Of a stretch of 64,000 nucleotides of DNA, positions 13,766-60,269 are shown one piece after another. Location of the stretch: positions 124,001-188,000 of the IMG/VR virus record IMGVR_UViG_3300028829_003504, one strand, 5' to 3'. Position 1 is the stretch's first letter. The number at the start of each line of letters is the position of its first letter. The position numbers and the translations under genes were made by a program. The notes under the pieces are model-generated. The model saw only the letters and a program-made list of their open reading frames with translations, made no database searches and was not told where the DNA came from.

Positions 13766-13866
13766 TTTGGTTTTCCTTTAAGGGTATTTCATTTAATAAG
13801 ATTTAATAAAAGACAAGACAGAGTGCCTTGTCTCAATTGTTTACAGTTTGCAGGGTAACTAATGTT

Positions 13867-20624: not shown

Positions 20625-20941
20625 GACGACTTCTCCTATGTTTATACAACATTCGCTCAACGTGAGCTTTCGGTTTATATGAGGGGGTTTGAAGTTGAAA
20701 AGTGTTGCTTCAACTTGATTACATTATAGCAAAATATAAGGTGGTTGACTAAGGTATTATTGGCCACTATTAGGCAATGTATCTATGCGATACTCGAATA
20801 CTAATATTATCAATTGCAACTCACTATCTTTACAGTTTTATAAATACCAGTTAGTGCTTATATTGAGGCTGAAACGTTTTGCTTCAACTGGACGCATTAT
20901 AACAAATATCAGCCCCTGTGTCTTGTTTGTTTCAGACGGCA

Positions 20942-39295: not shown

Positions 39296-39340
39296 AGTTT
39301 TTCCTTATTCATATAAGTTTGCTTGCTTCGTTATGGACTC

Positions 39341-39393
39341 ATTATAGCAGGTTAATACCTTTGATTATACTCTTAAATGAGCCGACATTAGGC
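39341..39393 (-). promoter_or_regulatory. TATAAT promoter with upstream GCCTA(A/G)TGCCG-like box (representative copy)
   Basis: Six copies with -10 at 7098, 20723, 20896, 25317, 35929, 39341 and plus-strand TAGGC 47-49 nt further on. Confidence 0.7.
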
Positions 39394-39418
39394 GACGAAA
39401 GATATATACCGCAGACAT

Positions 39419-39450
39419 AAAAAAACCACTGTACTCGAAAGCAAGTGGTT
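39419..39450 (-). terminator. Intrinsic terminator closing the ncRNA cassette
   Basis: AACCACT-TGCTTTCGAGTAC-AGTGGTT followed by TTTTT on the minus strand. Confidence 0.75.
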
Positions 39451-39456
39451 AGTGTT

Positions 39457-39569
39457 AGAATACATTGGGATAAAAAAGAACTGAGTATATTTCAACTCAG
39501 TCCAAAATATCAAAAACTGTTTAACTGATTGGGTTGATAGTTGTCTCACTTCCTATCCCAATGTATTCT
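39457..39569 (-). ncRNA. Structured RNA A (16-bp perfect closing stem, two inner hairpins)
   Basis: AGAATACATTGGGATA / TATCCCAATGTATTCT; inner ACTGAGT/ACTCAGT and TATCAA/TTGATA. Confidence 0.6.
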
Positions 39570-39576
39570 TAATAGG

Positions 39577-39647
39577 TTGAATACCGCATGAGGCAAAAAC
39601 GCGGCTAAACGATTGCTGGTAAATAAGGAGCCTCATGCTGTATTCAA
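39577..39647 (-). ncRNA. Structured RNA B (8+9 bp stem, 35-nt loop)
   Basis: TTGAATAC-x-GCATGAGGC / GCCTCATGC-x-GTATTCAA. Confidence 0.6.
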
Positions 39648-39653
39648 ATGGTC

Positions 39654-39706
39654 GCAACTCTAACTCCTTAAGAGGAACCCCATTCAACCGGAGGAGTTAG
39701 AGTTGC
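39654..39706 (-). ncRNA. Structured RNA C (15-bp perfect stem, 23-nt loop)
   Basis: GCAACTCTAACTCCT / AGGAGTTAGAGTTGC. Confidence 0.6.
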
Positions 39707-39741
39707 TTTTCTACTGTTCGAGTTACGAAGTCAAACAGCAA

Positions 39742-39822
39742 GAAAGTTTCAGGGTTATCTTACGGAAGGGAGAGCCTTGCTCACCTAACAGCCTTATCCT
39801 AACAAAGTTAAATGAAACTTTC
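39742..39822 (-). ncRNA. Structured RNA D (10-bp closing stem)
   Basis: GAAAGTTTCA / TGAAACTTTC; interior has TGTTAGG twice and AAGGC twice on the minus strand. Confidence 0.5.
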
Positions 39823-39863
39823 AGAGGCATGTCTAAATAGAACATGTAAGGAGATTCGTTTAA

Positions 39864-40156
39864 TATACTGTGGGTATTTCCCTAGTAGAAGAACTCAAGC
39901 TGTACCTTAGATACCACACGTTGGCCTTAGTGTTTGTGCTGGGTCTTTGAGTTTACATGCAAAGTGACCTGCCACACAGGTAAATAGTACAGCTCGGTAA
40001 TACGTTTGCGTTTAGTACGTATCGACATTCCTTTCCGATATTCTTACGTTGTGACATAGATACCGTGCGATAGGTAAATAGCCTTTCGTGCAATCGGAGT
40101 TCGCTTCTTCTAGACCCTTAGCGTCGAGTCCTGTTTAAGAAAATACACAAAGTATA
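39864..40156 (-). ncRNA. Structured RNA E (~290 nt, multibranched)
   Basis: Nested stems TATACT..GTATTT/AAATAC..AGTATA, CTAG.AGAAG.AACTC/GAGTT..CTTCT.CTAG, AGCTGTAC/GTACAGCT, ATACGT/ACGTAT. Confidence 0.6.
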
Positions 40157-40162
40157 CTAGTA

Positions 40163-40302
40163 TACTTTACTTAGTGCTACCCACTCAATGAGCTAAGATT
40201 AGGGCCTTGCGTGTGAACGGCGCGAACCTCTGTAGCTCTCTAAACAATGCCTCAACGCAACTTGGCATGGACAGATTAGAGTGAGTACCACTAAAGAAAG
40301 TA
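40163..40302 (-). ncRNA. Structured RNA F (~140 nt, long interrupted closing stem)
   Basis: Minus strand TACTTT-CT-TTAGTG-G-TACTCACTC pairs with GAGTGGGTA-G-CACTAA-GT-AAAGTA (a G-U pair favours minus); inner GAGCTA/TAGCTC and TGCC/GGCA. Confidence 0.6.
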
Positions 40303-40323
40303 GGATAGAGTCCTAGCGAGAAA

Positions 40324-40399
40324 TGGTGGGTCGTGCAAGATTCGAACTTGCGGCAAATTGGTTAAAAGCCAACTGCTCTACCAACTGAGCTAACGACCC
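40324..40399 (-). tRNA. tRNA-Lys(UUU)
   Basis: GGGTCGTTAGCTCAGTTGGTAGAGCAGTTGGCTTTTAACCAATTTGCCGCAAGTTCGAATCTTGCACGACCCACCA; 76 nt cloverleaf with encoded CCA. Confidence 0.97.
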
Positions 40400-40515
40400 A
40401 TAGTACAAACTATATATTAGTGTTTACAGTTTGTATTTTACATAAATACTGGAGGTATACGTACACCAGAATTAAACGTATTATATAGGCGTTGAACGTG
40501 TACGCGTTCTAGCCA

Positions 40516-40618
40516 TGTCCCTGACAGGAATTCGGGTTCTACCTGTAACTTACTATTTGAATTGAGGGTATCGCACCTCGCAGAAACAGCAATGCTCTAA
40601 GCTTTGAGCTATAGGAAC
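40516..40618 (-). ncRNA. tRNA-like RNA G (extended anticodon arm, enlarged T-loop, no CCA)
   Basis: Acceptor GTTCCT/AGGGAC, TA, D-arm GCTC-AAAGCTTA-GAGC, arm TTGCTGTTT/AAATAGTAA capped by GAGG/CCTC, T-stem ACAGG/CCTGT with 13-nt loop. Confidence 0.6.
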
Positions 40619-40644
40619 TTTTCGTTTAATCGCGTATAACAAAA

Positions 40645-40735
40645 TGAACAAGGCTGGAATCGATACCAGCAATGCCAGAATAGGGCTTACCGTAACACGA
40701 GCCTAACTGTTGGTTTATCTTAACTCTACTTGCTC
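40645..40735 (-). ncRNA. tRNA-like RNA H (acceptor and T arm intact, rest remodelled)
   Basis: Acceptor GAGCAAG/CTTGTTC then A; T-arm GCTGG-TATCGATT-CCAGC; starts about 11 nt after an AAACTGTAAA motif. Confidence 0.6.
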
Positions 40736-40746
40736 ACGTATTAATG

Positions 40747-40756
40747 TTTACAGTTT
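40747..40756 (-). promoter_or_regulatory. AAACTGTAAA promoter motif (representative copy)
   Basis: (A)AACTGTAAA core also at about 13840, 14406, 15843, 20829, 40423, 43485, 45353, 52079, 59585, 59608 (minus) and CTGTAAA near 56565, 62574, 62962, 63994 (plus), always oriented with the downstream gene. Confidence 0.7.
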
Positions 40757-40775
40757 TGTATTAAGTAGGATTTAC

Positions 40776-42296
40776 TTAATCTTCTTCGTCCGCAACTAGG
40801 TCACCTTTACCTGCACAGATAAGAGCGAAATTCTTGAGAGCTTTACCATTCGCCAATTGCTTCTTACACCAGAAGCGTATATCAACAGGCTTAACACCAA
40901 GTAAGTCGCAAGTTTCTTTTACCTGTCGCTTGTTACCTAACACCAGTGCTTTGAATGATAACCAAGAACACTTCTTAGCTCCGTGTAAGGGACAATCTTC
41001 GTGGAATTTCATATTACCACGAGTACCGCCTACTACGCCTAACATCTTCAAGAAGTTCCAAGTATCAAACACTGGATCTAGGCCTCTAGCCACACCATCA
41101 GCATCACGAATCCAGATACGTGCAAATGTATCTTGATACTGTAGCCCGCCAAGTTTGTTCTTGATAACTTTCAAGTTGATGAAACGATATTCGTCGTTTC
41201 CTTCGTGCTCAACAGACTTCTCATCCATAGTAGGACCTTTACCCCAACCTGAAGGTAGAGCACGGCTGGTAGATTTTATTCTACAGTCAGAGAAGAATTT
41301 CAACGCTTCACCTCCCGGCTCATACTCAGGATTACCAAACATAGTCGCAGGCTTCTGTCGTAATTGATTAACCCCAAATACTGTCATGCGTTTCTTCTTC
41401 ATAGAACCTTTAATGCGTTTAAGTTCTTTGGAGAACATCCGCGCTTGCAGGGCCATTGCATTGCTACCTTCGTCCGTATCTTCTTGCCTAGGTAACATAG
41501 CAGGATAGGAATCTAGTAGCGCGATTGCTTGCATCATACCATCTGCGGCAGGCACTTTAATTTTGTTATGCTTAGATAAGTACTTAGGGTCATATACAGA
41601 TTTGAATCGCTTGAGTAATTTCTTATCATGAGGGAACAAATAGTAATACTCTTTGCCTAATTTAACTTTATCAGGTAGTATTCTTTTTAGTCGATTATAG
41701 AATTCGAAAAATTCCTCGCCTCCATCAGTGGAGATATAATCAACGATCGGAGGTGTAATTTCCTCACCTGTATCGGGGTCTCTCTCTCCGAAGATTTGGC
41801 TCAACGTTTGCTTAACGCCTTGTGATTTTAGAATACTCTCAATGTAGTCAGGGCTACCTGAACCTTCGTAATCCCAGTAGCTGGCTTTACCCTCAAAGCC
41901 TTGTTTAATTATAGCTGACATTATTGTCATAGCTATTGTTGTCTTAGCGGATTGTTCACCACCAAAGATAGTGTACCAGCCACCTGATACGATACCACCG
42001 CCTATTAATAGATCAAGTGATACTAAACCTGTATGTAAACGAGGTTCGTCTGGGTCAAAAGCTGTACCTGCAAGACCCATCTTCTTCTTAACGTCTGTAA
42101 TGGATTCATCTAACATGTTTTCCAATAGAGATTTCGTTAAGGCGACTGCCTCTGAATGAGCGTTATCTGCAACTAAGGTAGCTTTATCGGAATTCTTGGC
42201 TTTCTTAGTTTTAGGAACATCAGCAACCTCAAGAGCCTTTTTGGCTCCTTTAGTTACTTTGGCTGATTTAGATCTAGTCGCTGTTTTAGTTGCCAT
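40776..42296 (-). CDS. recA: RecA/UvsX-like recombinase
   Basis: TGLVSLDLLIGGGI, Walker A GGEQSAKTT, DYE, LLDSY, ALQARMFS, VNQLR, MFGNPEYEPGGEALKFFSD, KNKLG. Confidence 0.93.
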   Translation of the reverse strand: MATKTATRSKSAKVTKGAKKALEVADVPKTKKAKNSDKATLVADNAHSEAVALTKSLLENMLDESITDVKKKMGLAGTAFDPDEPRLHTGLVSLDLLIGGGIVSGGWYTIFGGEQSAKTTIAMTIMSAIIKQGFEGKASYWDYEGSGSPDYIESILKSQGVKQTLSQIFGERDPDTGEEITPPIVDYISTDGGEEFFEFYNRLKRILPDKVKLGKEYYYLFPHDKKLLKRFKSVYDPKYLSKHNKIKVPAADGMMQAIALLDSYPAMLPRQEDTDEGSNAMALQARMFSKELKRIKGSMKKKRMTVFGVNQLRQKPATMFGNPEYEPGGEALKFFSDCRIKSTSRALPSGWGKGPTMDEKSVEHEGNDEYRFINLKVIKNKLGGLQYQDTFARIWIRDADGVARGLDPVFDTWNFLKMLGVVGGTRGNMKFHEDCPLHGAKKCSWLSFKALVLGNKRQVKETCDLLGVKPVDIRFWCKKQLANGKALKNFALICAGKGDLVADEED

Positions 42297-43491: not shown

Positions 43492-44541
43492 TTATGTATT
43501 TTGTAGACCTTGTTCGCGCATAGATACGCGCATCTTCTCTTTTTCAGATTTAGAAAACACCTCACCTATATCAAGGGTTAGTCTAGCACAACCATTAATG
43601 TCGGCGTGTTTTGCCAAGTACATAATATTATTAGACTCTCTCATGTTAGCAACCTCACTACTTAAGTCATAGTCGTTTGTAACTTTGTTATGTAGACCTT
43701 CCGCTGAATCCCCATCATCGTCTTCAACTATTTGGTCTAAGCTTGTGCTGAAATTAATCATAGTATTGGCCGAGCCTGACATAGCTAATTTTTTCTTCTG
43801 ACCTTGAGGCACAGTAAAGGCTATGCCGTACTCATGCTCAGAACTACTACAGGTCTGAGCATTAAACATCCACCACTTTATGTAGGAAGTTAAGGCACCT
43901 TTGTTTGCATCGTACTTGTTTAGAGCAATTATAACATTCTGTAGGAGACCTTGCCTTACGTCTAGGAAGTCGTATTGGTTATGAGGATTGGCCATAACGT
44001 GCTGCTTAGCCTGTGTGCTGCAAAGCCTTACGTATTCTTTCGCTACGTCTTGTTGATAGGCGTAAAACATCTTTAGGTAGTCAGTACTTTGATTGAAGCA
44101 TAAATATAAGTCGGACCGCTTTGTTGCGCCTAGGTCACGTTGGATTAGATCCAAATGCCTTGACCAACGGGCCCTGCGATTATCGAAGTTTGTAAGAAAT
44201 TTATCGTACAAACAATTAAACTCATCCTTATACCTATCCAACAAACGTTTAATGAAACAGTGGATAAAACTCCTCTCTATTCCAATCTTACGTATTAAGT
44301 TAAACTTCTTCTGCCTGTCAGACTCAAGATGTATCTGGCATAATATGTTAATGGCGTCTTCCCGTTCAAGAGCAACGAGTTTACGCTTTTTGTTTCTCGT
44401 TATCACCGATAGTATGTGAACCATTTGGGTATCAAATATATCAGTATGCAGGACAACGGGCTCAAGTGCATTATAGAGTAAGGTATCCATAATCTCACTT
44501 ATCTGGTCGCCCGTTAAGTTCTTGGTTTGGTCATCGGACAT
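43492..44541 (-). CDS. Sigma70-family sigma factor
   Basis: FLDVRQGLLQNVIIALNKYDANKGALTSYIKWWM matches region 2 (DLIQEG...AVDKFD..RG.KFSTYATWWI); TSLDQ matches region 3. Confidence 0.8.
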   Translation of the reverse strand: MSDDQTKNLTGDQISEIMDTLLYNALEPVVLHTDIFDTQMVHILSVITRNKKRKLVALEREDAINILCQIHLESDRQKKFNLIRKIGIERSFIHCFIKRLLDRYKDEFNCLYDKFLTNFDNRRARWSRHLDLIQRDLGATKRSDLYLCFNQSTDYLKMFYAYQQDVAKEYVRLCSTQAKQHVMANPHNQYDFLDVRQGLLQNVIIALNKYDANKGALTSYIKWWMFNAQTCSSSEHEYGIAFTVPQGQKKKLAMSGSANTMINFSTSLDQIVEDDDGDSAEGLHNKVTNDYDLSSEVANMRESNNIMYLAKHADINGCARLTLDIGEVFSKSEKEKMRVSMREQGLQNT

Positions 44542-47520: not shown

Positions 47521-48534
47521 CTATTTTACGTTAAAGAACTCGTCTGCTTTGACAAACGCCGTAAGCAACTCAGGTTCGCGTGTAGGATCGAATACAGGTA
47601 CGCTGTATTGCGCTTTCAGCTTATCACGTAAGGCAGCGTATACTTCGAAGCTTACTTCACGGCTAAATAAAGAGATTGCACCTAGACGTACATTAGGATT
47701 AGAAAAACGAGCAACCTGTAAGTTGAATCGAATTGTCTCATCTAAATCAATAGGCGTAGTAGTATCATTAATAATAGTACGGCTAGGATCGTGGCAGGCG
47801 ATCATCATATCAGGCTGTGAGCCTTGAATGATCGCATAAGTAGAACCGCCGAAACTAGGATGCAATATAGAGCCTTGACCTTCAACAACGTCAATGTGAT
47901 TATGGGGTGCAGAAGGTGTCTCTTGCTCAAGTGCCCCTACAATGAAATCAGCAGGTATCGTGTCGTTGGTAATGCCTGCACCGCTGATCAAGTAGCCTGT
48001 CTGGCCAGTTGCAACGAAACGACTGGAGTAACTTTGATTTAGCAATTCTTTCCATACTGATAAGGCTGTGAACTTCTTGCCTGATGCACAATCTGTACCG
48101 AAGGTAAGAATACGATAACCTGAACGTTCCTCGCCCGTACCTTTAATCCAATCGATAGGTTTATGTCGGAAATCGTATACTTCTATTCCGTTTAAGTCAC
48201 CAAACTCAGCAAGCAACACAGGCTCAAGTTTAGCATGAGAGCCTGATGCTATATTTAAGCCCAGGTCAATTGCTTCTTTACATACGCTAAGTACTCTAGA
48301 ATTGAAGTTACTTACTTCTCGAGGACTGAATCCGAGTAATAATGTTTTAGCGCCTGCTTCTTTAGCTTGCGCTAAACTCATATCAGGAAGACCTAGGTCG
48401 TAGGCTTCTTCGCTATCACGGTGTTGAGCCAGACATCGCTCAGGGGCCCAATCGACAATACCACATGCTGTCTTTACTTTACGGAATATAGTTTCGGAGC
48501 CTACATATATAATAAATGGATGTTGAATATTCAT
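47521..48534 (-). CDS. DUF1611 / DgcN-like P-loop protein (N-acetyltransferase family)
   Basis: Start MNIQHPF; KTACGIVDW.PE, DLGLPDMS, GAKTLLLG, GTDCASGKKFTAL, FVATGQTG, DFIVGA, VVEGQGSILHPSF, GSQPD...CH. Confidence 0.88.
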   Translation of the reverse strand: MNIQHPFIIYVGSETIFRKVKTACGIVDWAPERCLAQHRDSEEAYDLGLPDMSLAQAKEAGAKTLLLGFSPREVSNFNSRVLSVCKEAIDLGLNIASGSHAKLEPVLLAEFGDLNGIEVYDFRHKPIDWIKGTGEERSGYRILTFGTDCASGKKFTALSVWKELLNQSYSSRFVATGQTGYLISGAGITNDTIPADFIVGALEQETPSAPHNHIDVVEGQGSILHPSFGGSTYAIIQGSQPDMMIACHDPSRTIINDTTTPIDLDETIRFNLQVARFSNPNVRLGAISLFSREVSFEVYAALRDKLKAQYSVPVFDPTREPELLTAFVKADEFFNVK

Positions 48535-48548
48535 TTGTTTACCTTGTG

Positions 48549-49325
48549 TTATTTGATGCAGACCCAGCCTGCGAAGTTTAAATGACGATAGAAGCAATCG
48601 ATGTTCTTAAAGCCCGCAAGCGTTAACATTTCCTCATTGGCTCTAGCGGTTTGCGGAACAAGAACGCCTTCGAGTGAGGCTTTCTTGCGATCAATATCTT
48701 CGTAAGAATAACCATTACTGTGTTTCATTTTATGATACTCACCGACAAATAATTTGTTCAATCTACTACCACTACCTAGAATCTTCTCCACAAAGATAAA
48801 GGCTCCGCCGACAGGTAAGGCATCATAGATATTCTGAATGATTTCAAGTCGGTACTCTATAGGAGTAAACTGGATAGTTAGTATAGAAAGAATCAAACCA
48901 TGCTTCTCAGGCCAACCTATAGTTTGAGGACACTGAAAAATATGAGGCTGCCTCAAATCATCTCGATACACTTCAACGTTTCGGTTCTCAATGAAACGAT
49001 CGTCAAGCTCGGTCAGCATAGGCTCAGATATCTCAATAGCATAGCAGCCTATAGTAGGGTCTTTAGTGAACGGGGCGAGTGCTTCACCTCGACTAGCTCC
49101 TAGATCAAGGACAGTACGTAGACCGAAGTTTGAGCGGTTTTGCTCTGCTCTAGGTAAAGCATTCAATACGTCCATACCTAACTGGTAAGTCAGACTACGC
49201 ATCATGTCGTAGCTAGGTATACTACGTGATAGCATGTTATCAAAAGATTGTGCAACATCCTGGTTAAACTCCCACTTGTCGCCTGGGACGTGCGTATCTT
49301 CTCGGACTTTGGGTTCGTCTTTCAC
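48549..49325 (-). CDS. cmoA: CmoA-like carboxy-S-adenosylmethionine synthase
   Basis: WEFNQDVAQSFDNMLSRSIPSY (cf. FPDMIQRSVPGY), DLGASRG, TIQF, FVEK, K.SNGYS..DI.RKK.SLEGV, LNFAG. Confidence 0.88.
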   Translation of the reverse strand: MKDEPKVREDTHVPGDKWEFNQDVAQSFDNMLSRSIPSYDMMRSLTYQLGMDVLNALPRAEQNRSNFGLRTVLDLGASRGEALAPFTKDPTIGCYAIEISEPMLTELDDRFIENRNVEVYRDDLRQPHIFQCPQTIGWPEKHGLILSILTIQFTPIEYRLEIIQNIYDALPVGGAFIFVEKILGSGSRLNKLFVGEYHKMKHSNGYSYEDIDRKKASLEGVLVPQTARANEEMLTLAGFKNIDCFYRHLNFAGWVCIK

Positions 49326-49438
49326 CGATAGTCTCCTTATGTTTCTGTTGTAGGGTTTCGACGGTTTGAATAAAGTACATATATCTTACCGTATATAGAC
49401 GGTGATATTTAAGTCTTTACAGTAATCTATTGACCTAA

Positions 49439-49804
49439 TTACCAGCTATCTTTATAGGGGTTTTCCGTTTCAGTCAGGTCATACTTAGATAGAGGGACTT
49501 CATCGGATAGGTAGGTAATAGGGTCTCTTAAAATACATAATACACTTCGAGTAACGTAATCTGACACAGGTGTGGCTGCTTGAAGTATGTACCCTCCTGA
49601 GTCAATCTGTGCGCCTGTATAGGTCGAGTAGTTAATACTGTTTTTAAGTCGCTCAACATCTAGTGCGAACTCAGGATCAGTAACGGTATCCCGTTTGTGG
49701 TCAAAAGCCATGTGCGTACCAAGCTCAATCAAACGTAAACCTAATATCTTAGATCGCTCTCTGCTATAGAAAGGTAGAATTAGATTCTTGAATAGTTTAA
49801 GCAA
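49439..49804 (-). CDS. Hypothetical protein
   Basis: 121 aa, TTG start uncertain. Confidence 0.55.
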   Translation of the reverse strand: MLKLFKNLILPFYSRERSKILGLRLIELGTHMAFDHKRDTVTDPEFALDVERLKNSINYSTYTGAQIDSGGYILQAATPVSDYVTRSVLCILRDPITYLSDEVPLSKYDLTETENPYKDSW

Positions 49805-49937
49805 GGCAGAACAGTCCGATACAAAAGCCTGTAAGAAAAGCCACTGATAATCCAGCTGTCATGTAGATGTTGAATCTATCAATGATTTTCTTACGAGGCC
49901 ATGTGCTTTTGAATAAGTAGATCTTATTAAAGAGCAT
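49797..49937 (-). CDS. 46-aa membrane peptide
   Basis: ATG directly after the transferase stop; MLFNKIYLFKSTWPRKKIIDRFNIYMTAGLSVAFLTGFCIGLFCLA. Confidence 0.5.
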   Translation of the reverse strand: MLFNKIYLFKSTWPRKKIIDRFNIYMTAGLSVAFLTGFCIGLFCLA

Positions 49938-51002
49938 CTATATACCCTTACCGCTTACGGGGCCTTTAGTATAGTCTAAACCACAGCCATCGGCAATAAC
50001 CTTAAGCAGATTGTTGACAATCTCTTTAGTTATACAGTACATCATTTGCGGAGGTACGGAACGACCAAGACGCTCCCATTGCTGCTCATACGTACCTATT
50101 AACTTGAAGTCTTCCGGGAAACCGCACACTACCTTCAATTCTTCGATCGTGTACTTACGCTGTACGCCCTCAAACGTCTCGATAAACCCACCAGAACTAA
50201 ACTGAGCCGTAGGTGAAGTAGCACCGTCACTAGCCGTAATGGTAGGATGAGGAACTTGCGCAGTAGCCCAGTTAAGGGTTCCTCCGGCTTCTTTAGATCT
50301 AAGCATAGCGATGTGCGGCAGTTTCTCCTGCACAGTAACCTGTCTGTGTGCAGGTTTAGGGAACACAGGCTTCAAGTCGTACTTCTTAGCAAGGTCTTTT
50401 CTGATGCCGACGTAGATTATACGTTCACGCCCTTGAGGAACACCTAACCAAGAACCGTTTATCTTTGCAGCACGTACAACGTAACCGCATTCAGCAAGCT
50501 TACCAGTTATTTCTTTGAAGTAACCTTTAGCATCACCTTTAATAAGGCCAGTAACGTTTTCTGCTACGAACACCCAAGGCTTTAAACCTTTTAACTCACG
50601 GCAGAATTCAAAGAACAAATCGTCTACACGTTGCTTAACGCCTTCTGAGTAATCCTTTGCTTCGCCCCATCCATCTTCACGAGTACCTGCTGTAGAGAAC
50701 GCACTGCATGGTGGGCTTCCGTCAAGAAAAGGTAAGTGTCCTTTCTTTATTCCTAAAAGCTTCAATACGTCGGAAGGTTTAACCTTTCGGATGTCTGAAC
50801 CATCGCAGAAGCTTTTAACGTGGTTGGCTTCATACGTTTCACGCGCAACGGGAATAAATTCGTTAGCGTATTTTATATCAATACCCGCCATTTTGTGCCC
50901 TGTACAAGAACCACCACAACCTGAGAAGAAACTTGCTCCTAAGAACAATTTCTTCTTCTTGTTTATCTGCTTCATTGTAGGAATCGTAGGAGGAAGTTTC
51001 AT
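49938..51002 (-). CDS. DNA cytosine-C5 transferase, predicted carboxymethyltransferase
   Basis: Motif I FFSGCGG, IV GSPPCSAFS, VI AENV, VIII VPQGRERI, X QQWERLGRSVPP (Asn replaced by Arg). Start placed at MKLPP. Confidence 0.9.
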   Translation of the reverse strand: MKLPPTIPTMKQINKKKKLFLGASFFSGCGGSCTGHKMAGIDIKYANEFIPVARETYEANHVKSFCDGSDIRKVKPSDVLKLLGIKKGHLPFLDGSPPCSAFSTAGTREDGWGEAKDYSEGVKQRVDDLFFEFCRELKGLKPWVFVAENVTGLIKGDAKGYFKEITGKLAECGYVVRAAKINGSWLGVPQGRERIIYVGIRKDLAKKYDLKPVFPKPAHRQVTVQEKLPHIAMLRSKEAGGTLNWATAQVPHPTITASDGATSPTAQFSSGGFIETFEGVQRKYTIEELKVVCGFPEDFKLIGTYEQQWERLGRSVPPQMMYCITKEIVNNLLKVIADGCGLDYTKGPVSGKGI

Positions 51003-51115
51003 ATAACCCAACCTAGTTTCGTTTGAATTTGAATAAGAGTATAGTTAAATATAATAGATGCCTGTTCCATAAGAGTAAGCATCAATATAATCTCTTGTAT
51101 ACATATATGCGGCAT
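50999..51115 (-). CDS. 38-aa peptide coupled to the transferase start
   Basis: AGGA RBS; TGA overlaps the next ATG (ATGA). Confidence 0.35.
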   Translation of the reverse strand: MPHICIQEIILMLTLMEQASIIFNYTLIQIQTKLGWVI

Positions 51116-52023: not shown

Positions 52024-52119
52024 TTTTTCGCACCTTAAACAAGAATACCCAATAATCTTAATTGACTATTGGGTATTCTTTACAGTTTTGTGTTTAGTAG
52101 TAGTAGTATATCCACTACA

Positions 52120-59573: not shown

Positions 59574-59609
59574 GGGTCGTCTCCTTTACAGTTGTTCCAA
59601 AGTATATGT

Positions 59610-60269
59610 TTACAGTTTAGGGCAATCCTTGAACATAGACATAAAGGTATCGAAGTAACTTTCAGTATCAAAGATTTCAAAGTCGTCTATACCGAAATGC
59701 TGATGCAATCCATAGACACCTATCAAGGTAGAATCCAGTTGATGTTCAGTAGGTCCTTCATAAGTCTTAGCTTTAGAAGTTAGGCCTTGGTTTTTATACT
59801 CATGCTTCAAGTCAAACTTCTTGTTGGCTCTATTCTTCCAAGTAGCAGCAGTAATAAACCGAGGGTACTTAGGACCAAGGTGATTAAACATGCTAGTTAT
59901 TCTCCCTAAGCCCATATTTATAGCTTCGATTGTACTGCCTCCATTGCCTCTGGATTGAAAACGCTCCATGTAAACAATCCCTATATCAAAAGGATGTAGA
60001 AGTTTAGTTAAATTTTCCTCGAAAGCCATAAGCTCCGCTTGGGCTTCAACTACGTTATATAGTAGTTTATCGTGAGCCAACATGCCTGTACCTAATATCT
60101 CAATCTCAAGTCTCTTACTGACTAGTTTGCGTTTGTGCTTCTTTCCATCGACCACTATATCCTTATAGGTAATTTCGCTTATACATCTGCCTTTTAAAAC
60201 AGTGATGGCAAAATTCTTCGTACCGGGATCAGCACTGAACATTGTTATCTCTTCGACTTTAGTTGTCAT
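59610..60269 (-). CDS. RuvC-like Holliday junction resolvase
   Basis: SADPGTKNFAI, YMERFQ, AATWKN, HQLDS. Confidence 0.8.
   Translation of the reverse strand: MTTKVEEITMFSADPGTKNFAITVLKGRCISEITYKDIVVDGKKHKRKLVSKRLEIEILGTGMLAHDKLLYNVVEAQAELMAFEENLTKLLHPFDIGIVYMERFQSRGNGGSTIEAINMGLGRITSMFNHLGPKYPRFITAATWKNRANKKFDLKHEYKNQGLTSKAKTYEGPTEHQLDSTLIGVYGLHQHFGIDDFEIFDTESYFDTFMSMFKDCPKL

What the first reader, a model, noticed from the sequence alone, without database searches (positions are those of the whole stretch)
40645..40735. tRNA-like RNA H keeps only the acceptor/T-arm half
Seen: 7-bp acceptor stacked on a GCTGG/CCAGC T-arm (8-nt loop TATCGATT), discriminator A, no clear D-stem and an elongated bulged arm. 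This top-half architecture recalls the tRNA-like domains of tmRNA and bacterial Y RNAs, but at 91 nt it is neither full molecule. It begins right at a promoter.
Basis: partly seen in the sequence, partly recalled or inferred. Interest (0 to 1): 0.6.

Follow-up and report, generated by a model that had tools for sequence, protein, structure and literature searches.

The report
Orphan tRNA-like half-molecule in jumbo phage
A 91-base stretch just after the recA-like gene of a 262-kb phage carries a real tRNA-type acceptor stem and T-arm but no other tRNA parts; it is most likely a tRNA-derived small RNA or its remnant, not a tmRNA or Y RNA, and no relative shares it, so its function stays open.

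Summary
The bare architecture is not rare: it appears in 52% of shuffles of this intergenic region. The T-arm core is rare. Only two sites in 524 kb lie within one edit of GGTTCGAWTCC, and only this one has the full stem plus a stacked acceptor. It lies in an ORF-poor 1.5-kb "RNA island" with the genome's only tRNA (Lys-UUU) and a second cloverleaf-like element. It starts 9 nt after a conserved phage motif (AAACTGTAAACA) that also precedes the tRNA. Related phages hold two conserved non-canonical tRNA-like RNAs at the same place. However, RNA H matches no model (tRNA, tmRNA, YrlA or the relatives' RNAs). Its fold is not unusually stable (z -0.77), it has no homologue anywhere searched, encodes no CCA, and the genome lacks Ro60, RtcB and a CCA-adding enzyme. 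Verdict: a tRNA-derived top-half module. A functional tRNA-like small RNA is about 0.4 likely, an inert relic about 0.3, chance or a terminator hairpin about 0.15-0.2. The tmRNA and Y RNA readings are rejected.

The parts
40745..40756 (-). Promoter-like phage motif AAACTGTAAACA (P1). It lies 20 nt after the recA stop and ends 9 nt before RNA H.
   Evidence: Exact 12-mer. AAACTGTAAA[C/G]A occurs 9 times in the genome, all intergenic and gene-sense. The same motif follows recA in L003/L016. It shares 22 of 24 nt with the copy before tRNA-Lys. It is not a sigma-70 consensus site. The promoter role is inferred.
40729..40735 (-). Acceptor stem, 5' strand GAGCAAG
   Evidence: Pairs 7/7 with 40652-40646, with a G-U at pair 3.
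40714..40728 (-). 15-nt unpaired linker where a D-arm would be
   Evidence: Unpaired in the minimum-energy fold and the centroid. No D-stem can be drawn.
40675..40713 (-). Elongated, bulged arm (3+3+4+3 bp with internal loops)
   Evidence: Present in the minimum-energy fold only and mostly absent from the centroid. It is weakly supported and has no 7-nt anticodon-type loop.
40653..40670 (-). T-arm-like hairpin GCTGG-TATCGATT-CCAGC. The loop is the canonical TTCGATT with one extra A.
   Evidence: It is one of only 2 sites in the genome within one edit of GGTTCGAWTCC, and the only one with a 5-bp stem. The terminator scan also flags it as terminator-like.
40646..40652 (-). Acceptor stem, 3' strand CTTGTTC, stacked directly on the T-stem
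40645..40645 (-). Discriminator A. No CCA follows.
   Evidence: Direct reading. The next bases are TTTTGTT.
40630..40644 (-). U-rich trailer (TTTTGTTATACGCGA)
   Evidence: Direct reading. It is part of the terminator-like call.
40517..40618 (-). Context: second cloverleaf-like element. It has a 6-bp acceptor, a canonical D-arm TAGCTCA...TAGAGCA, a long middle arm, and a hairpin with a 13-nt loop in the T position.
   Evidence: Fold. The fold is retained in the minimum-energy fold and centroid of the 308-nt stretch. Neither ARAGORN nor Rfam calls it.
40421..40432 (-). Context: second copy of the motif (P2), 21 nt before tRNA-Lys
40324..40399 (-). Context: tRNA-Lys (UUU), the only canonical tRNA of the genome, with encoded CCA
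   Evidence: ARAGORN. Rfam 75.4 bits.
40776..42296 (-). Context: RecA/UvsX-like recombinase gene directly upstream
   Evidence: PHROG 97 at E 8e-52 and Pfam RecA.

Best explanation
RNA H is a tRNA-derived 'top half': an acceptor stem coaxial with a T-arm. It heads a small RNA-gene island downstream of the phage's recA-like gene.

Proposed working:
- Inferred: host RNA polymerase, directed by the phage's own sigma factor (gene at 43492-44541), starts a few bases downstream of the T4-late-like motif TGTAAACA, about 2-4 nt before G1.
- Established knowledge for such minihelices, not tested here: an acceptor/T-arm minihelix is enough to be recognised by RNase P, which would remove the short leader, by 3' trimming enzymes, and by the CCA-adding enzyme.
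- Inferred product: a ~91-nt non-decoding tRNA-like small RNA.

It would be analogous to the two conserved non-canonical tRNA-like RNAs that related phages keep at the same locus, and to RNA species I and II of the T4 tRNA region.

Inferred function (weakest step): either a mimic or decoy for proteins that bind the tRNA top half, or a processing handle that lets tRNA enzymes cut the island transcript into pieces.

It cannot decode: it has no anticodon arm. It is not a tmRNA or a Y RNA.
For: - The T-arm core is a near-canonical tRNA T-arm and is almost unique in 524 kb. It alone has a full stem plus a stacked 7-bp acceptor.
- All 12 helix pairs are intact although the body is unrecognisable.
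- Location: an ORF-poor 1.48-kb region that also holds the only tRNA and a second element with a perfect D-arm.
- A dedicated copy of the conserved motif lies 9 nt upstream. It is 22/24 identical to the copy before tRNA-Lys.
- Relatives (RecA 48-50% identical) carry conserved tRNA-like RNAs with compensatory changes downstream of recA: a 118-135-nt five-arm RNA and a 72-nt three-arm RNA ending in CCA.
- NCTB has no canonical tRNA at all yet keeps both tRNA-like RNAs, so such RNAs are kept for something other than decoding.
- The layout 'motif, two tRNA-like RNAs, one tRNA' is parallel in the window and in L003.
- Of 308 acceptor-plus-hairpin configurations in the genome, RNA H is by far the closest to the helices of the NCTB five-arm RNA: 18/24 stem positions against 13 for the next best when scored on NCTB (15 on the L003 helices). 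The differing pairs are compensatory.
- Group-2 jumbo phages, which include NCTB, use host RNA polymerase with phage sigma factors (PMC7824862). A sigma-factor gene lies 2.7 kb upstream.
Against: - No covariance or profile model detects it: Rfam tRNA, tmRNA and YrlA give nothing. The relatives' models give 9.9 and 7.3 bits with filters off, and the first uses a different 5' strand. nhmmer gives nothing at E <= 100.
- The fold is not more stable than shuffles, and the acceptor helix is lost in a longer context.
- The T-loop has 8 nt, with an insertion between the positions of U54 and U55. That may break the T-loop fold.
- No CCA is encoded, whereas the phage's real tRNA and the relatives' small RNA encode it.
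- The closest relative (RecA 65%) has protein genes at this position instead.
- No homologue in IMG/VR, GenBank phages or GTDB genomes.
- Expression is untested.
Confidence: 0.4

Rival explanations
1. Inert relic. RNA H is what is left of a tRNA or tRNA-like gene, perhaps one copy of a duplicated promoter-tRNA unit. Its middle was replaced or scrambled by insertions and deletions. It may still be transcribed but does nothing.
For: - One-base insertion in the T-loop, no D or anticodon arm, no CCA.
- The body has no stable fold.
- The P1 and P2 motif regions are 22/24 identical, as expected for a tandem duplication.
- The region is variable: the closest relative lacks it.
- No homologue anywhere.
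- A neighbouring element keeps only a D-arm and a loose cloverleaf.
- tRNA gene fragments are common in prokaryotic genomes (PMC9897764).
Against: - By inference, point-mutation decay strong enough to erase the D and anticodon arms should also have broken some of the 12 helix pairs. All are intact.
- The clade is not tRNA-rich. It has 0-1 tRNAs per genome, so there is no sign of a large decaying array.
- Relatives keep non-decoding tRNA-like RNAs under selection.
Confidence: 0.3
2. No tRNA relation. The hairpin at 40670-40653 with its U-rich tail is a weak intrinsic terminator or attenuator, or just a hairpin in the 5' part of the P1 transcript. On this reading the 5'/3' pairing is fortuitous.
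For: - The terminator scan lists this hairpin.
- The acceptor-plus-hairpin architecture arises in 52% of shuffles and about 150 times per strand.
- Fold z-score -0.77.
- No model hit.
- At a 70% threshold ARAGORN calls it, but it also calls eight other places in the same 1.5 kb.
Against: - The loop and stem match the tRNA T-arm core with one insertion. That is a pattern seen only twice in 524 kb.
- The phage's evident terminators have 6-9-bp stems and clean T-runs. This one has 5 bp and an interrupted tail.
- It lies 245 nt from the only tRNA and 27 nt from another tRNA-like element.
Confidence: 0.17
3. A tRNA-like domain of a tmRNA-type or Y-RNA-type ribonucleoprotein RNA, or a two-piece version of one.
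For: - Top-half-only anatomy.
- G3-U70 and A73, the alanine identity set shared with the tRNA-like domains of tmRNAs. This is read directly from the sequence; the identity rule is established knowledge.
Against: - No tmRNA by ARAGORN or Rfam.
- No YrlA match.
- No TROVE/Ro60 or RtcB in the complete genome.
- No tag reading frame or pseudoknot domain. The short ORFs nearby are unconvincing.
- No CCA.
Confidence: 0.03

Closest known systems
Canonical tRNA (Rfam RF00005)
   Same: A 7-bp acceptor stacked on a 5-bp T-stem. The T-loop core is TCGAUU. U8-A9 follow the acceptor, there is a single discriminator base, and it sits beside a real tRNA gene.
   Different: No D-arm, no anticodon arm, an 8-nt T-loop, no CCA, and a length of 91 nt. 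ARAGORN and Infernal do not detect it.
Non-canonical tRNA-like RNAs of related jumbo phages
   Same: The same locus downstream of recA, and the same promoter-like motif in L003. All have an acceptor plus T-arm with non-tRNA bodies. R2 has the same three-helix plan of acceptor, one long bulged arm and T-arm. RNA H's helices are 18/24 identical to the NCTB R1 helices, and the differing pairs are compensatory.
   Different: There is no significant model or profile match. The internal arms are not alignable. Those RNAs have canonical 7-nt T-loops and end in CC or CCA. They are conserved across phages, whereas RNA H is unique.
RNA species I and II of the phage T4 tRNA gene region
   Same: Small RNAs encoded among phage tRNA genes (figure legend in PMC2330249). 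From my own knowledge, they are stable, matured with the tRNAs, and of unknown function.
   Different: They are not in the libraries searched.
tRNA-like domain of tmRNA
   Same: The acceptor/T-arm half alone, with G3-U70 and A73.
   Different: No mRNA-like domain, no pseudoknots, no CCA, and no match to RF00023 or the ARAGORN tmRNA search.
Bacterial Y RNAs (YrlA; PMC4201824)
   Same: tRNA mimicry by a T-arm-containing module. YrlA is a substrate of RNase P and the CCA-adding enzyme, and some are phage-encoded.
   Different: YrlA genes lie near Ro60, and the tRNA-like part is internal to a Ro-binding stem. Here there is no Ro60 in the genome and no RF02553 match.
tRNA gene fragments and pseudogenes (PMC9897764)
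   Same: A partial tRNA-type sequence next to a tRNA gene.
   Different: Typical fragments are 3' or 5' pieces left by integrating elements. RNA H keeps both acceptor strands, perfectly paired, around a foreign body.

Membership tests
tRNA (RF00005) | Cloverleaf with D-arm and anticodon arm, detectable by the covariance model or ARAGORN | tested here: not met
   ARAGORN at default settings finds only tRNA-Lys. RF00005 finds only tRNA-Lys at E <= 10 in the whole genome. Nothing appears in the 221-nt Rfam search.
tRNA (RF00005) | 7-bp acceptor stacked on a 5-bp T-stem | tested here: met
   12/12 pairs.
tRNA (RF00005) | 7-nt T-loop (T54-Psi55-C56-R57-A58-N-N) | tested here: not met
   The loop is TATCGATT, 8 nt, with one base inserted after the first T.
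tmRNA (RF00023) | tRNA-like domain joined to an mRNA-like tag frame and pseudoknots; 3' CCA | tested here: not met
   No tmRNA by ARAGORN, even at a lowered threshold. No Rfam match. The element is 91 nt, has no CCA, and no credible ORF lies nearby.
YrlA / bacterial Y RNA (RF02553) | Encoded with a Ro60 (TROVE) gene | tested here: not met
   No PF05731 match in the complete 261,788-bp genome, while the control genomes were detected.
YrlA / bacterial Y RNA (RF02553) | Match to the family model (Ro-binding stem plus internal tRNA-like domain) | tested here: not met
   No match at gathering score or at E <= 10.
Five-arm tRNA-like RNA of the NCTB/L003 phages (model R1) | Match to the covariance model over its length, including three internal arms | tested here: not met
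   No hit with default filters. With filters off it scores 9.9 bits, E 0.014 in 1.6 kb, on the T-arm and 3' strand only and with another 5' partner. nhmmer finds nothing.
Five-arm tRNA-like RNA of the NCTB/L003 phages (model R1) | Homologous acceptor and T helices at the syntenic position | tested here: inconclusive
   18/24 stem positions are identical to NCTB, the best of 308 configurations (next best 13 against NCTB, 15 against L003), with compensatory differences. This is my own statistic, and it is partly explained by features common to all tRNAs.
Three-arm 72-nt tRNA-like RNA of the NCTB/L003 phages (model R2) | Match to the covariance model; encoded CCA; apical loop AUUUCAAC | tested here: not met
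   7.3 bits, E 0.3 with filters off. There is no CCA and no such loop. Only the overall three-helix plan is shared.
Intrinsic terminator | G+C-rich hairpin immediately followed by a U-run | tested here: inconclusive
   The consensus scan lists it: 5-bp stem, 4 G-C pairs, tail CTTGTTCATT. It is weaker than the phage's clear terminators.
T4 RNA species I/II | Sequence or structure similarity; co-maturation with tRNAs | not tested
   No reference sequence was at hand. Only their existence in the T4 tRNA region is cited (PMC2330249).

The most novel reading that the evidence does not exclude
RNA H is a working minihelix RNA. It would be cut out by RNase P, given CCA by the host, and, because it carries G3-U70 with A73, either charged by alanyl-tRNA synthetase or used as a decoy for host defence or toxin enzymes that attack the tRNA acceptor end or T-arm. 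It would be one member of an undescribed repertoire of non-decoding tRNA-like RNAs that group-2 jumbo phages keep downstream of recA. That repertoire includes the conserved five-arm and D-arm-less CCA-ending RNAs of the NCTB-type phages, which persist even in a phage with no canonical tRNA.
Probability: 0.12. Interest if true: 0.7.

Novelty: new variant of a known kind. Interest (0 to 1): 0.4.

Why it matters
Phage tRNA genes are usually discussed as codon suppliers or as replacements for tRNAs cut by host defences. Non-decoding tRNA look-alikes in phages, such as T4 species I/II, have remained unexplained for decades. This clade of aquatic jumbo phages carries 0-1 real tRNAs but two tRNA-like RNAs at a fixed locus behind a phage-specific promoter-like motif. 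If RNA H and its counterparts are made and matured, they would offer a compact system for asking what tRNA top-half mimics do during infection. If RNA H is only a relic, it still marks this locus as a place where tRNA-type genes turn over quickly.

Tried and rejected
- Rfam at gathering score on the whole window, and at E <= 10 on 6.5 kb and on 221 nt: only tRNA-Lys matches, plus noise.
- RF00005 on the whole genome: only tRNA-Lys.
- ARAGORN with introns, a mitochondrial model, a tmRNA model and lowered thresholds. RNA H appears only at the 70% threshold, together with eight evidently spurious calls in 1.5 kb.
- Megablast and blastn of the region against 50,697 phage records: only the tRNA-Lys part matches.
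- Synteny through the RecA-like protein in IMG/VR and JGI metagenomes. This recovered one identical copy (L011, no variation) and a 65% relative (L012) that has protein genes at this position instead. More distant relatives have other RNAs there.
- Pattern scans:
  - The T-arm with its insertion in IMG/VR: 8 loci, all unrelated.
  - The motif ATTGCTGGT..TCGAKTCC, shared with the relatives' small RNA: 62 loci, and only L003's own contig is relevant.
  - The T-arm plus 3' strand in 185,579 GTDB genomes: 2 chance hits in coding-like sequence.
  - Two scans for more members of the relatives' RNA families: only L003's contig.
- Covariance models of the relatives' RNAs against the window, filters on and off, and against three relatives' records, the L002 and L005 phages and Dickeya phage JA29. 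Two further loci, L017 and L018, are not held and were not searched.
- nhmmer profiles of the relatives' RNAs against the genome.
- Sliding-window folding: nothing stands out at RNA H.
- Paralogues of RNA H in the genome: none.
- Small ORFs across the element: none credible.
- Ro60, RtcB and CCA-adding enzyme: absent.
- A 'tRNA methyltransferase' PHROG hit at 48549-49325 turned out to be a sub-threshold CmoA-like methyltransferase sitting among DNA-modification genes. It is not evidence for tRNA biology.

Full report
**Setting**

The window is bases 124001-188000 of a complete 261,788-bp IMG/VR phage record with direct terminal repeats. Almost all genes lie on the minus strand. The finding lies on the minus strand, 41 nt downstream of the stop of a RecA/UvsX-like gene (40776-42296). 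It sits in a 1.48-kb stretch (39296-40775) without credible ORFs.

Genes for an ssDNA-binding protein and a phage sigma factor lie just upstream. The RecA protein places the phage near phage NCTB, the Dickeya Salmondvirus phages and the Erwinia Yoloswag-like phages, at 45-50% identity. These are 'group 2' jumbo phages, which have no RNA polymerase of their own but carry sigma factors and a gp33 homologue (PMC7824862). The genome has one canonical tRNA, tRNA-Lys(UUU) at 40399-40324, with encoded CCA.

**The observation**

- GAGCAAG paired 7/7 with CTTGTTC (G-U at pair 3)
- the hairpin GCTGG-TATCGATT-CCAGC, abutting the 3' strand
- discriminator A
- a 15-nt unpaired stretch where a D-arm should be
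- one irregular arm

The loop is the canonical TTCGATT with one extra A. No CCA follows; the trailer is U-rich.

**Is it more than chance?**

Not by thermodynamics:
- z is -0.77 for the 91-mer.
- Sliding-window z-scores are about 0 over this stretch, against -3 over tRNA-Lys.
- In the 308-nt stretch between the two promoter motifs the acceptor helix drops out of the minimum-energy fold.

Not by the architecture alone. A 7-bp helix stacked on any 5-bp hairpin occurs about 150 times per strand and in 52% of shuffles of the region.

Yes by the T-arm sequence:
- Only two sites in 524 kb lie within one edit of GGTTCGAWTCC.
- Only this one has the 5-bp stem and a stacked 7-bp acceptor.
- It lies 245 nt from the only tRNA.
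- It lies 27 nt from a second element (40618-40517) that folds as a loose cloverleaf with a textbook D-arm, TAGCTCA...TAGAGCA.

I conclude that the 3' half of RNA H is of genuine tRNA type. I put pure coincidence at roughly 10-15%.

**The promoter claim**

There is no sigma-70-type site here. However, AAACTGTAAACA ends 9 nt before G1.
- AAACTGTAAA[C/G]A occurs nine times in the genome, against about 0.06 expected by my calculation. All copies are between genes and in their sense.
- One copy lies 21 nt before tRNA-Lys.
- The two copies in this region share 22 of 24 nt.
- The motif also follows recA directly in relative L003/L016, and a variant (AAAAGTGTAAATAG) does so in L014.
- Its core, TGTAAACA, resembles the T4 late promoter TATAAATA (my knowledge). 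With T4 geometry the start would fall about 2-4 nt before G1, with U at -1.

That it is a promoter is an inference. In several other copies a hairpin begins so close to the motif that another role cannot be excluded.

**Comparison with known families**

- No Rfam family matches RNA H at any threshold tried. This includes tRNA, tmRNA and YrlA.
- ARAGORN calls it only at a threshold where eight other places in the same 1.5 kb are also called.
- The genome has no Ro60/TROVE, RtcB or CCA-adding enzyme.

The tmRNA and Y RNA resemblance therefore stays a resemblance of shape only.

**Relatives**

Nothing similar to RNA H exists in GenBank phages, IMG/VR or GTDB genomes.
- The only other copy is an identical one from a metagenome (L011).
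- The closest relative (L012, RecA 65%) has protein genes at this position instead.
- Covariation therefore cannot be tested.

The more distant NCTB/L003 group is informative. RecA is 48-50% identical to the window and 78% identical within the group. Downstream of recA these phages carry two conserved RNAs that ARAGORN and Rfam do not call:
- A 118-135-nt five-arm RNA. It has an acceptor, three internal arms and a canonical T-arm, and 8 pairs show double compensatory changes.
- A 72-nt RNA. It has an acceptor, one long bulged arm with the 8-nt loop AUUUCAAC, a T-arm and encoded ACCA. It scores 99.8 bits in NCTB, and every helix substitution is compensated or wobble-compatible.

NCTB has no canonical tRNA yet keeps both RNAs. 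L003 and L002 have one tRNA-Met each, and JA29 has none. This clade therefore maintains non-decoding tRNA-like RNAs.

The order 'motif, two tRNA-like RNAs, one tRNA' in L003 mirrors 'motif, RNA H, second element, motif, tRNA-Lys' in the window.

**Is RNA H their homologue?**

Standard tools say no:
- 9.9 and 7.3 bits with filters off, the first with a different 5' strand.
- nhmmer finds nothing.

A statistic of my own says perhaps. Among all 308 acceptor-plus-hairpin configurations in the genome, RNA H is the clear best match to the helices of the NCTB five-arm RNA. It scores 18 of 24 stem positions, against 13 for the next best when scored on NCTB (15 on the L003 helices). The G3-U70 pair is kept and the three differing pairs are changed on both sides. 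Part of this is explained by features common to all tRNAs. I treat it as suggestive only.

**Interpretation**

- *Best reading (about 0.4).* RNA H is a tRNA-derived top-half RNA, transcribed from the motif and matured by the host's tRNA enzymes. From established work on minihelices, those enzymes need only the acceptor/T-arm half. It would be a non-decoding tRNA mimic like its neighbours in related phages and like T4 RNA species I/II (PMC2330249). Its role would be as a decoy or mimic, or as a processing handle; that step is inferred.
- *Second (about 0.3).* The same origin, but now an inert relic. The T-loop insertion, the lack of CCA, the formless body, the promoter duplication and the absence from the nearest relative fit this. 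The twelve intact pairs and the low tRNA count of the whole clade argue against simple decay.
- *Third (about 0.17).* A weak terminator or leader hairpin with a fortuitous 5'/3' pairing.
- *A tmRNA- or Y-RNA-type molecule:* about 0.03.

**Limits**

- Expression could not be examined.

Noticed in passing
L003:7502-7573, L013:6486-6557, L014:6476-6547, L021:7893-7964, L009 (phage NCTB):8211-8285: A conserved 72-nt tRNA-like RNA. It has a 7-bp acceptor, no D-arm, one long arm with the 8-nt loop AUUUCAAC, a T-arm with a conserved U-C mismatch, and encoded ACCA. It is 96% conserved, and all helix changes are compensated or wobble-compatible. ARAGORN does not call it, and Rfam gives only a 13.9-bit tmRNA hit. 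It appears to be an undescribed family.
   Followed up: partly
L003:6813-6945, L013:5794-5924, L014:5793-5923, L021:7201-7331, L009:8935-9052: A conserved 118-135-nt five-arm tRNA-like RNA (acceptor, three internal arms, canonical T-arm, 3' U-CC). Eight pairs show double compensatory changes between NCTB and the L003 group. It is absent from JA29 and from the L002 phage.
   Followed up: partly
L003:6576-6804 (also L014:5558-5786): An 18-19-bp long-range helix (CAACATAGCGATACTTTC with its complement about 190 nt later) lies between the promoter-like motif and the five-arm RNA, preceded by a 15-bp hairpin at the transcript start. This may be a larger structured RNA.
   Followed up: no
window 40517-40618 (-): A second tRNA-like element with a canonical D-arm (TAGCTCA-AAGCT-TAGAGCA), a 6-bp acceptor, a long middle arm capped by a small hairpin, and a 13-nt loop where the T-loop should be. 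Its fold persists in a longer context, but no tRNA tool calls it.
   Followed up: partly
window 13838-13849, 20827-20838, 40421-40432, 40745-40756, 52077-52088, 59607-59618 (all -) and further copies in G000: The conserved intergenic sense-strand motif AAACTGTAAA[C/G]A, with 9 copies in the genome. It is often followed at once by a strong hairpin and is shared with the L003 phage. It is probably the phage's own promoter class, similar to the T4 late TATAAATA, but the adjacent hairpins are unexplained.
   Followed up: partly
window 40324-40399 (-): The only tRNA of a 262-kb phage is tRNA-Lys(UUU), about 80% identical to the tRNA-Lys of T5-like phages. From my knowledge, tRNA-Lys is the target of anticodon nucleases such as PrrC and of the PARIS system. 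A single Lys tRNA therefore looks more like a counter-defence replacement than a codon supply.
   Followed up: no
window 39550-39750 (-): Two very stable hairpins (z -7.4 for 39750-39651), including a 15-bp perfect stem that buries an AAGGAG. After it a 44-codon TTG frame (39687-39553) begins. The 1 kb downstream of tRNA-Lys is otherwise ORF-poor and ends in a clear terminator at 39503-39478.
   Followed up: no
window 40149-40168: A perfect 20-nt palindrome (AAGTATACTAGTATACTT core) lies inside the RNA island.
   Followed up: no
window 47521-51011 (-): A gene cluster of a DUF1611 protein, a CmoA-like SAM-dependent enzyme (labelled 'tRNA methyltransferase' in PHROGs but below the curated cut-offs) and a C5 cytosine DNA methylase. 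It is more likely DNA modification than tRNA modification.
   Followed up: partly
Erwinia phage records H8-H29: The RecA/UvsX gene of the Erwinia Yoloswag-like phages matches in two pieces spanning about 2.3 kb. This suggests an insertion (intein or intron) that is absent from the window's gene.
   Followed up: no
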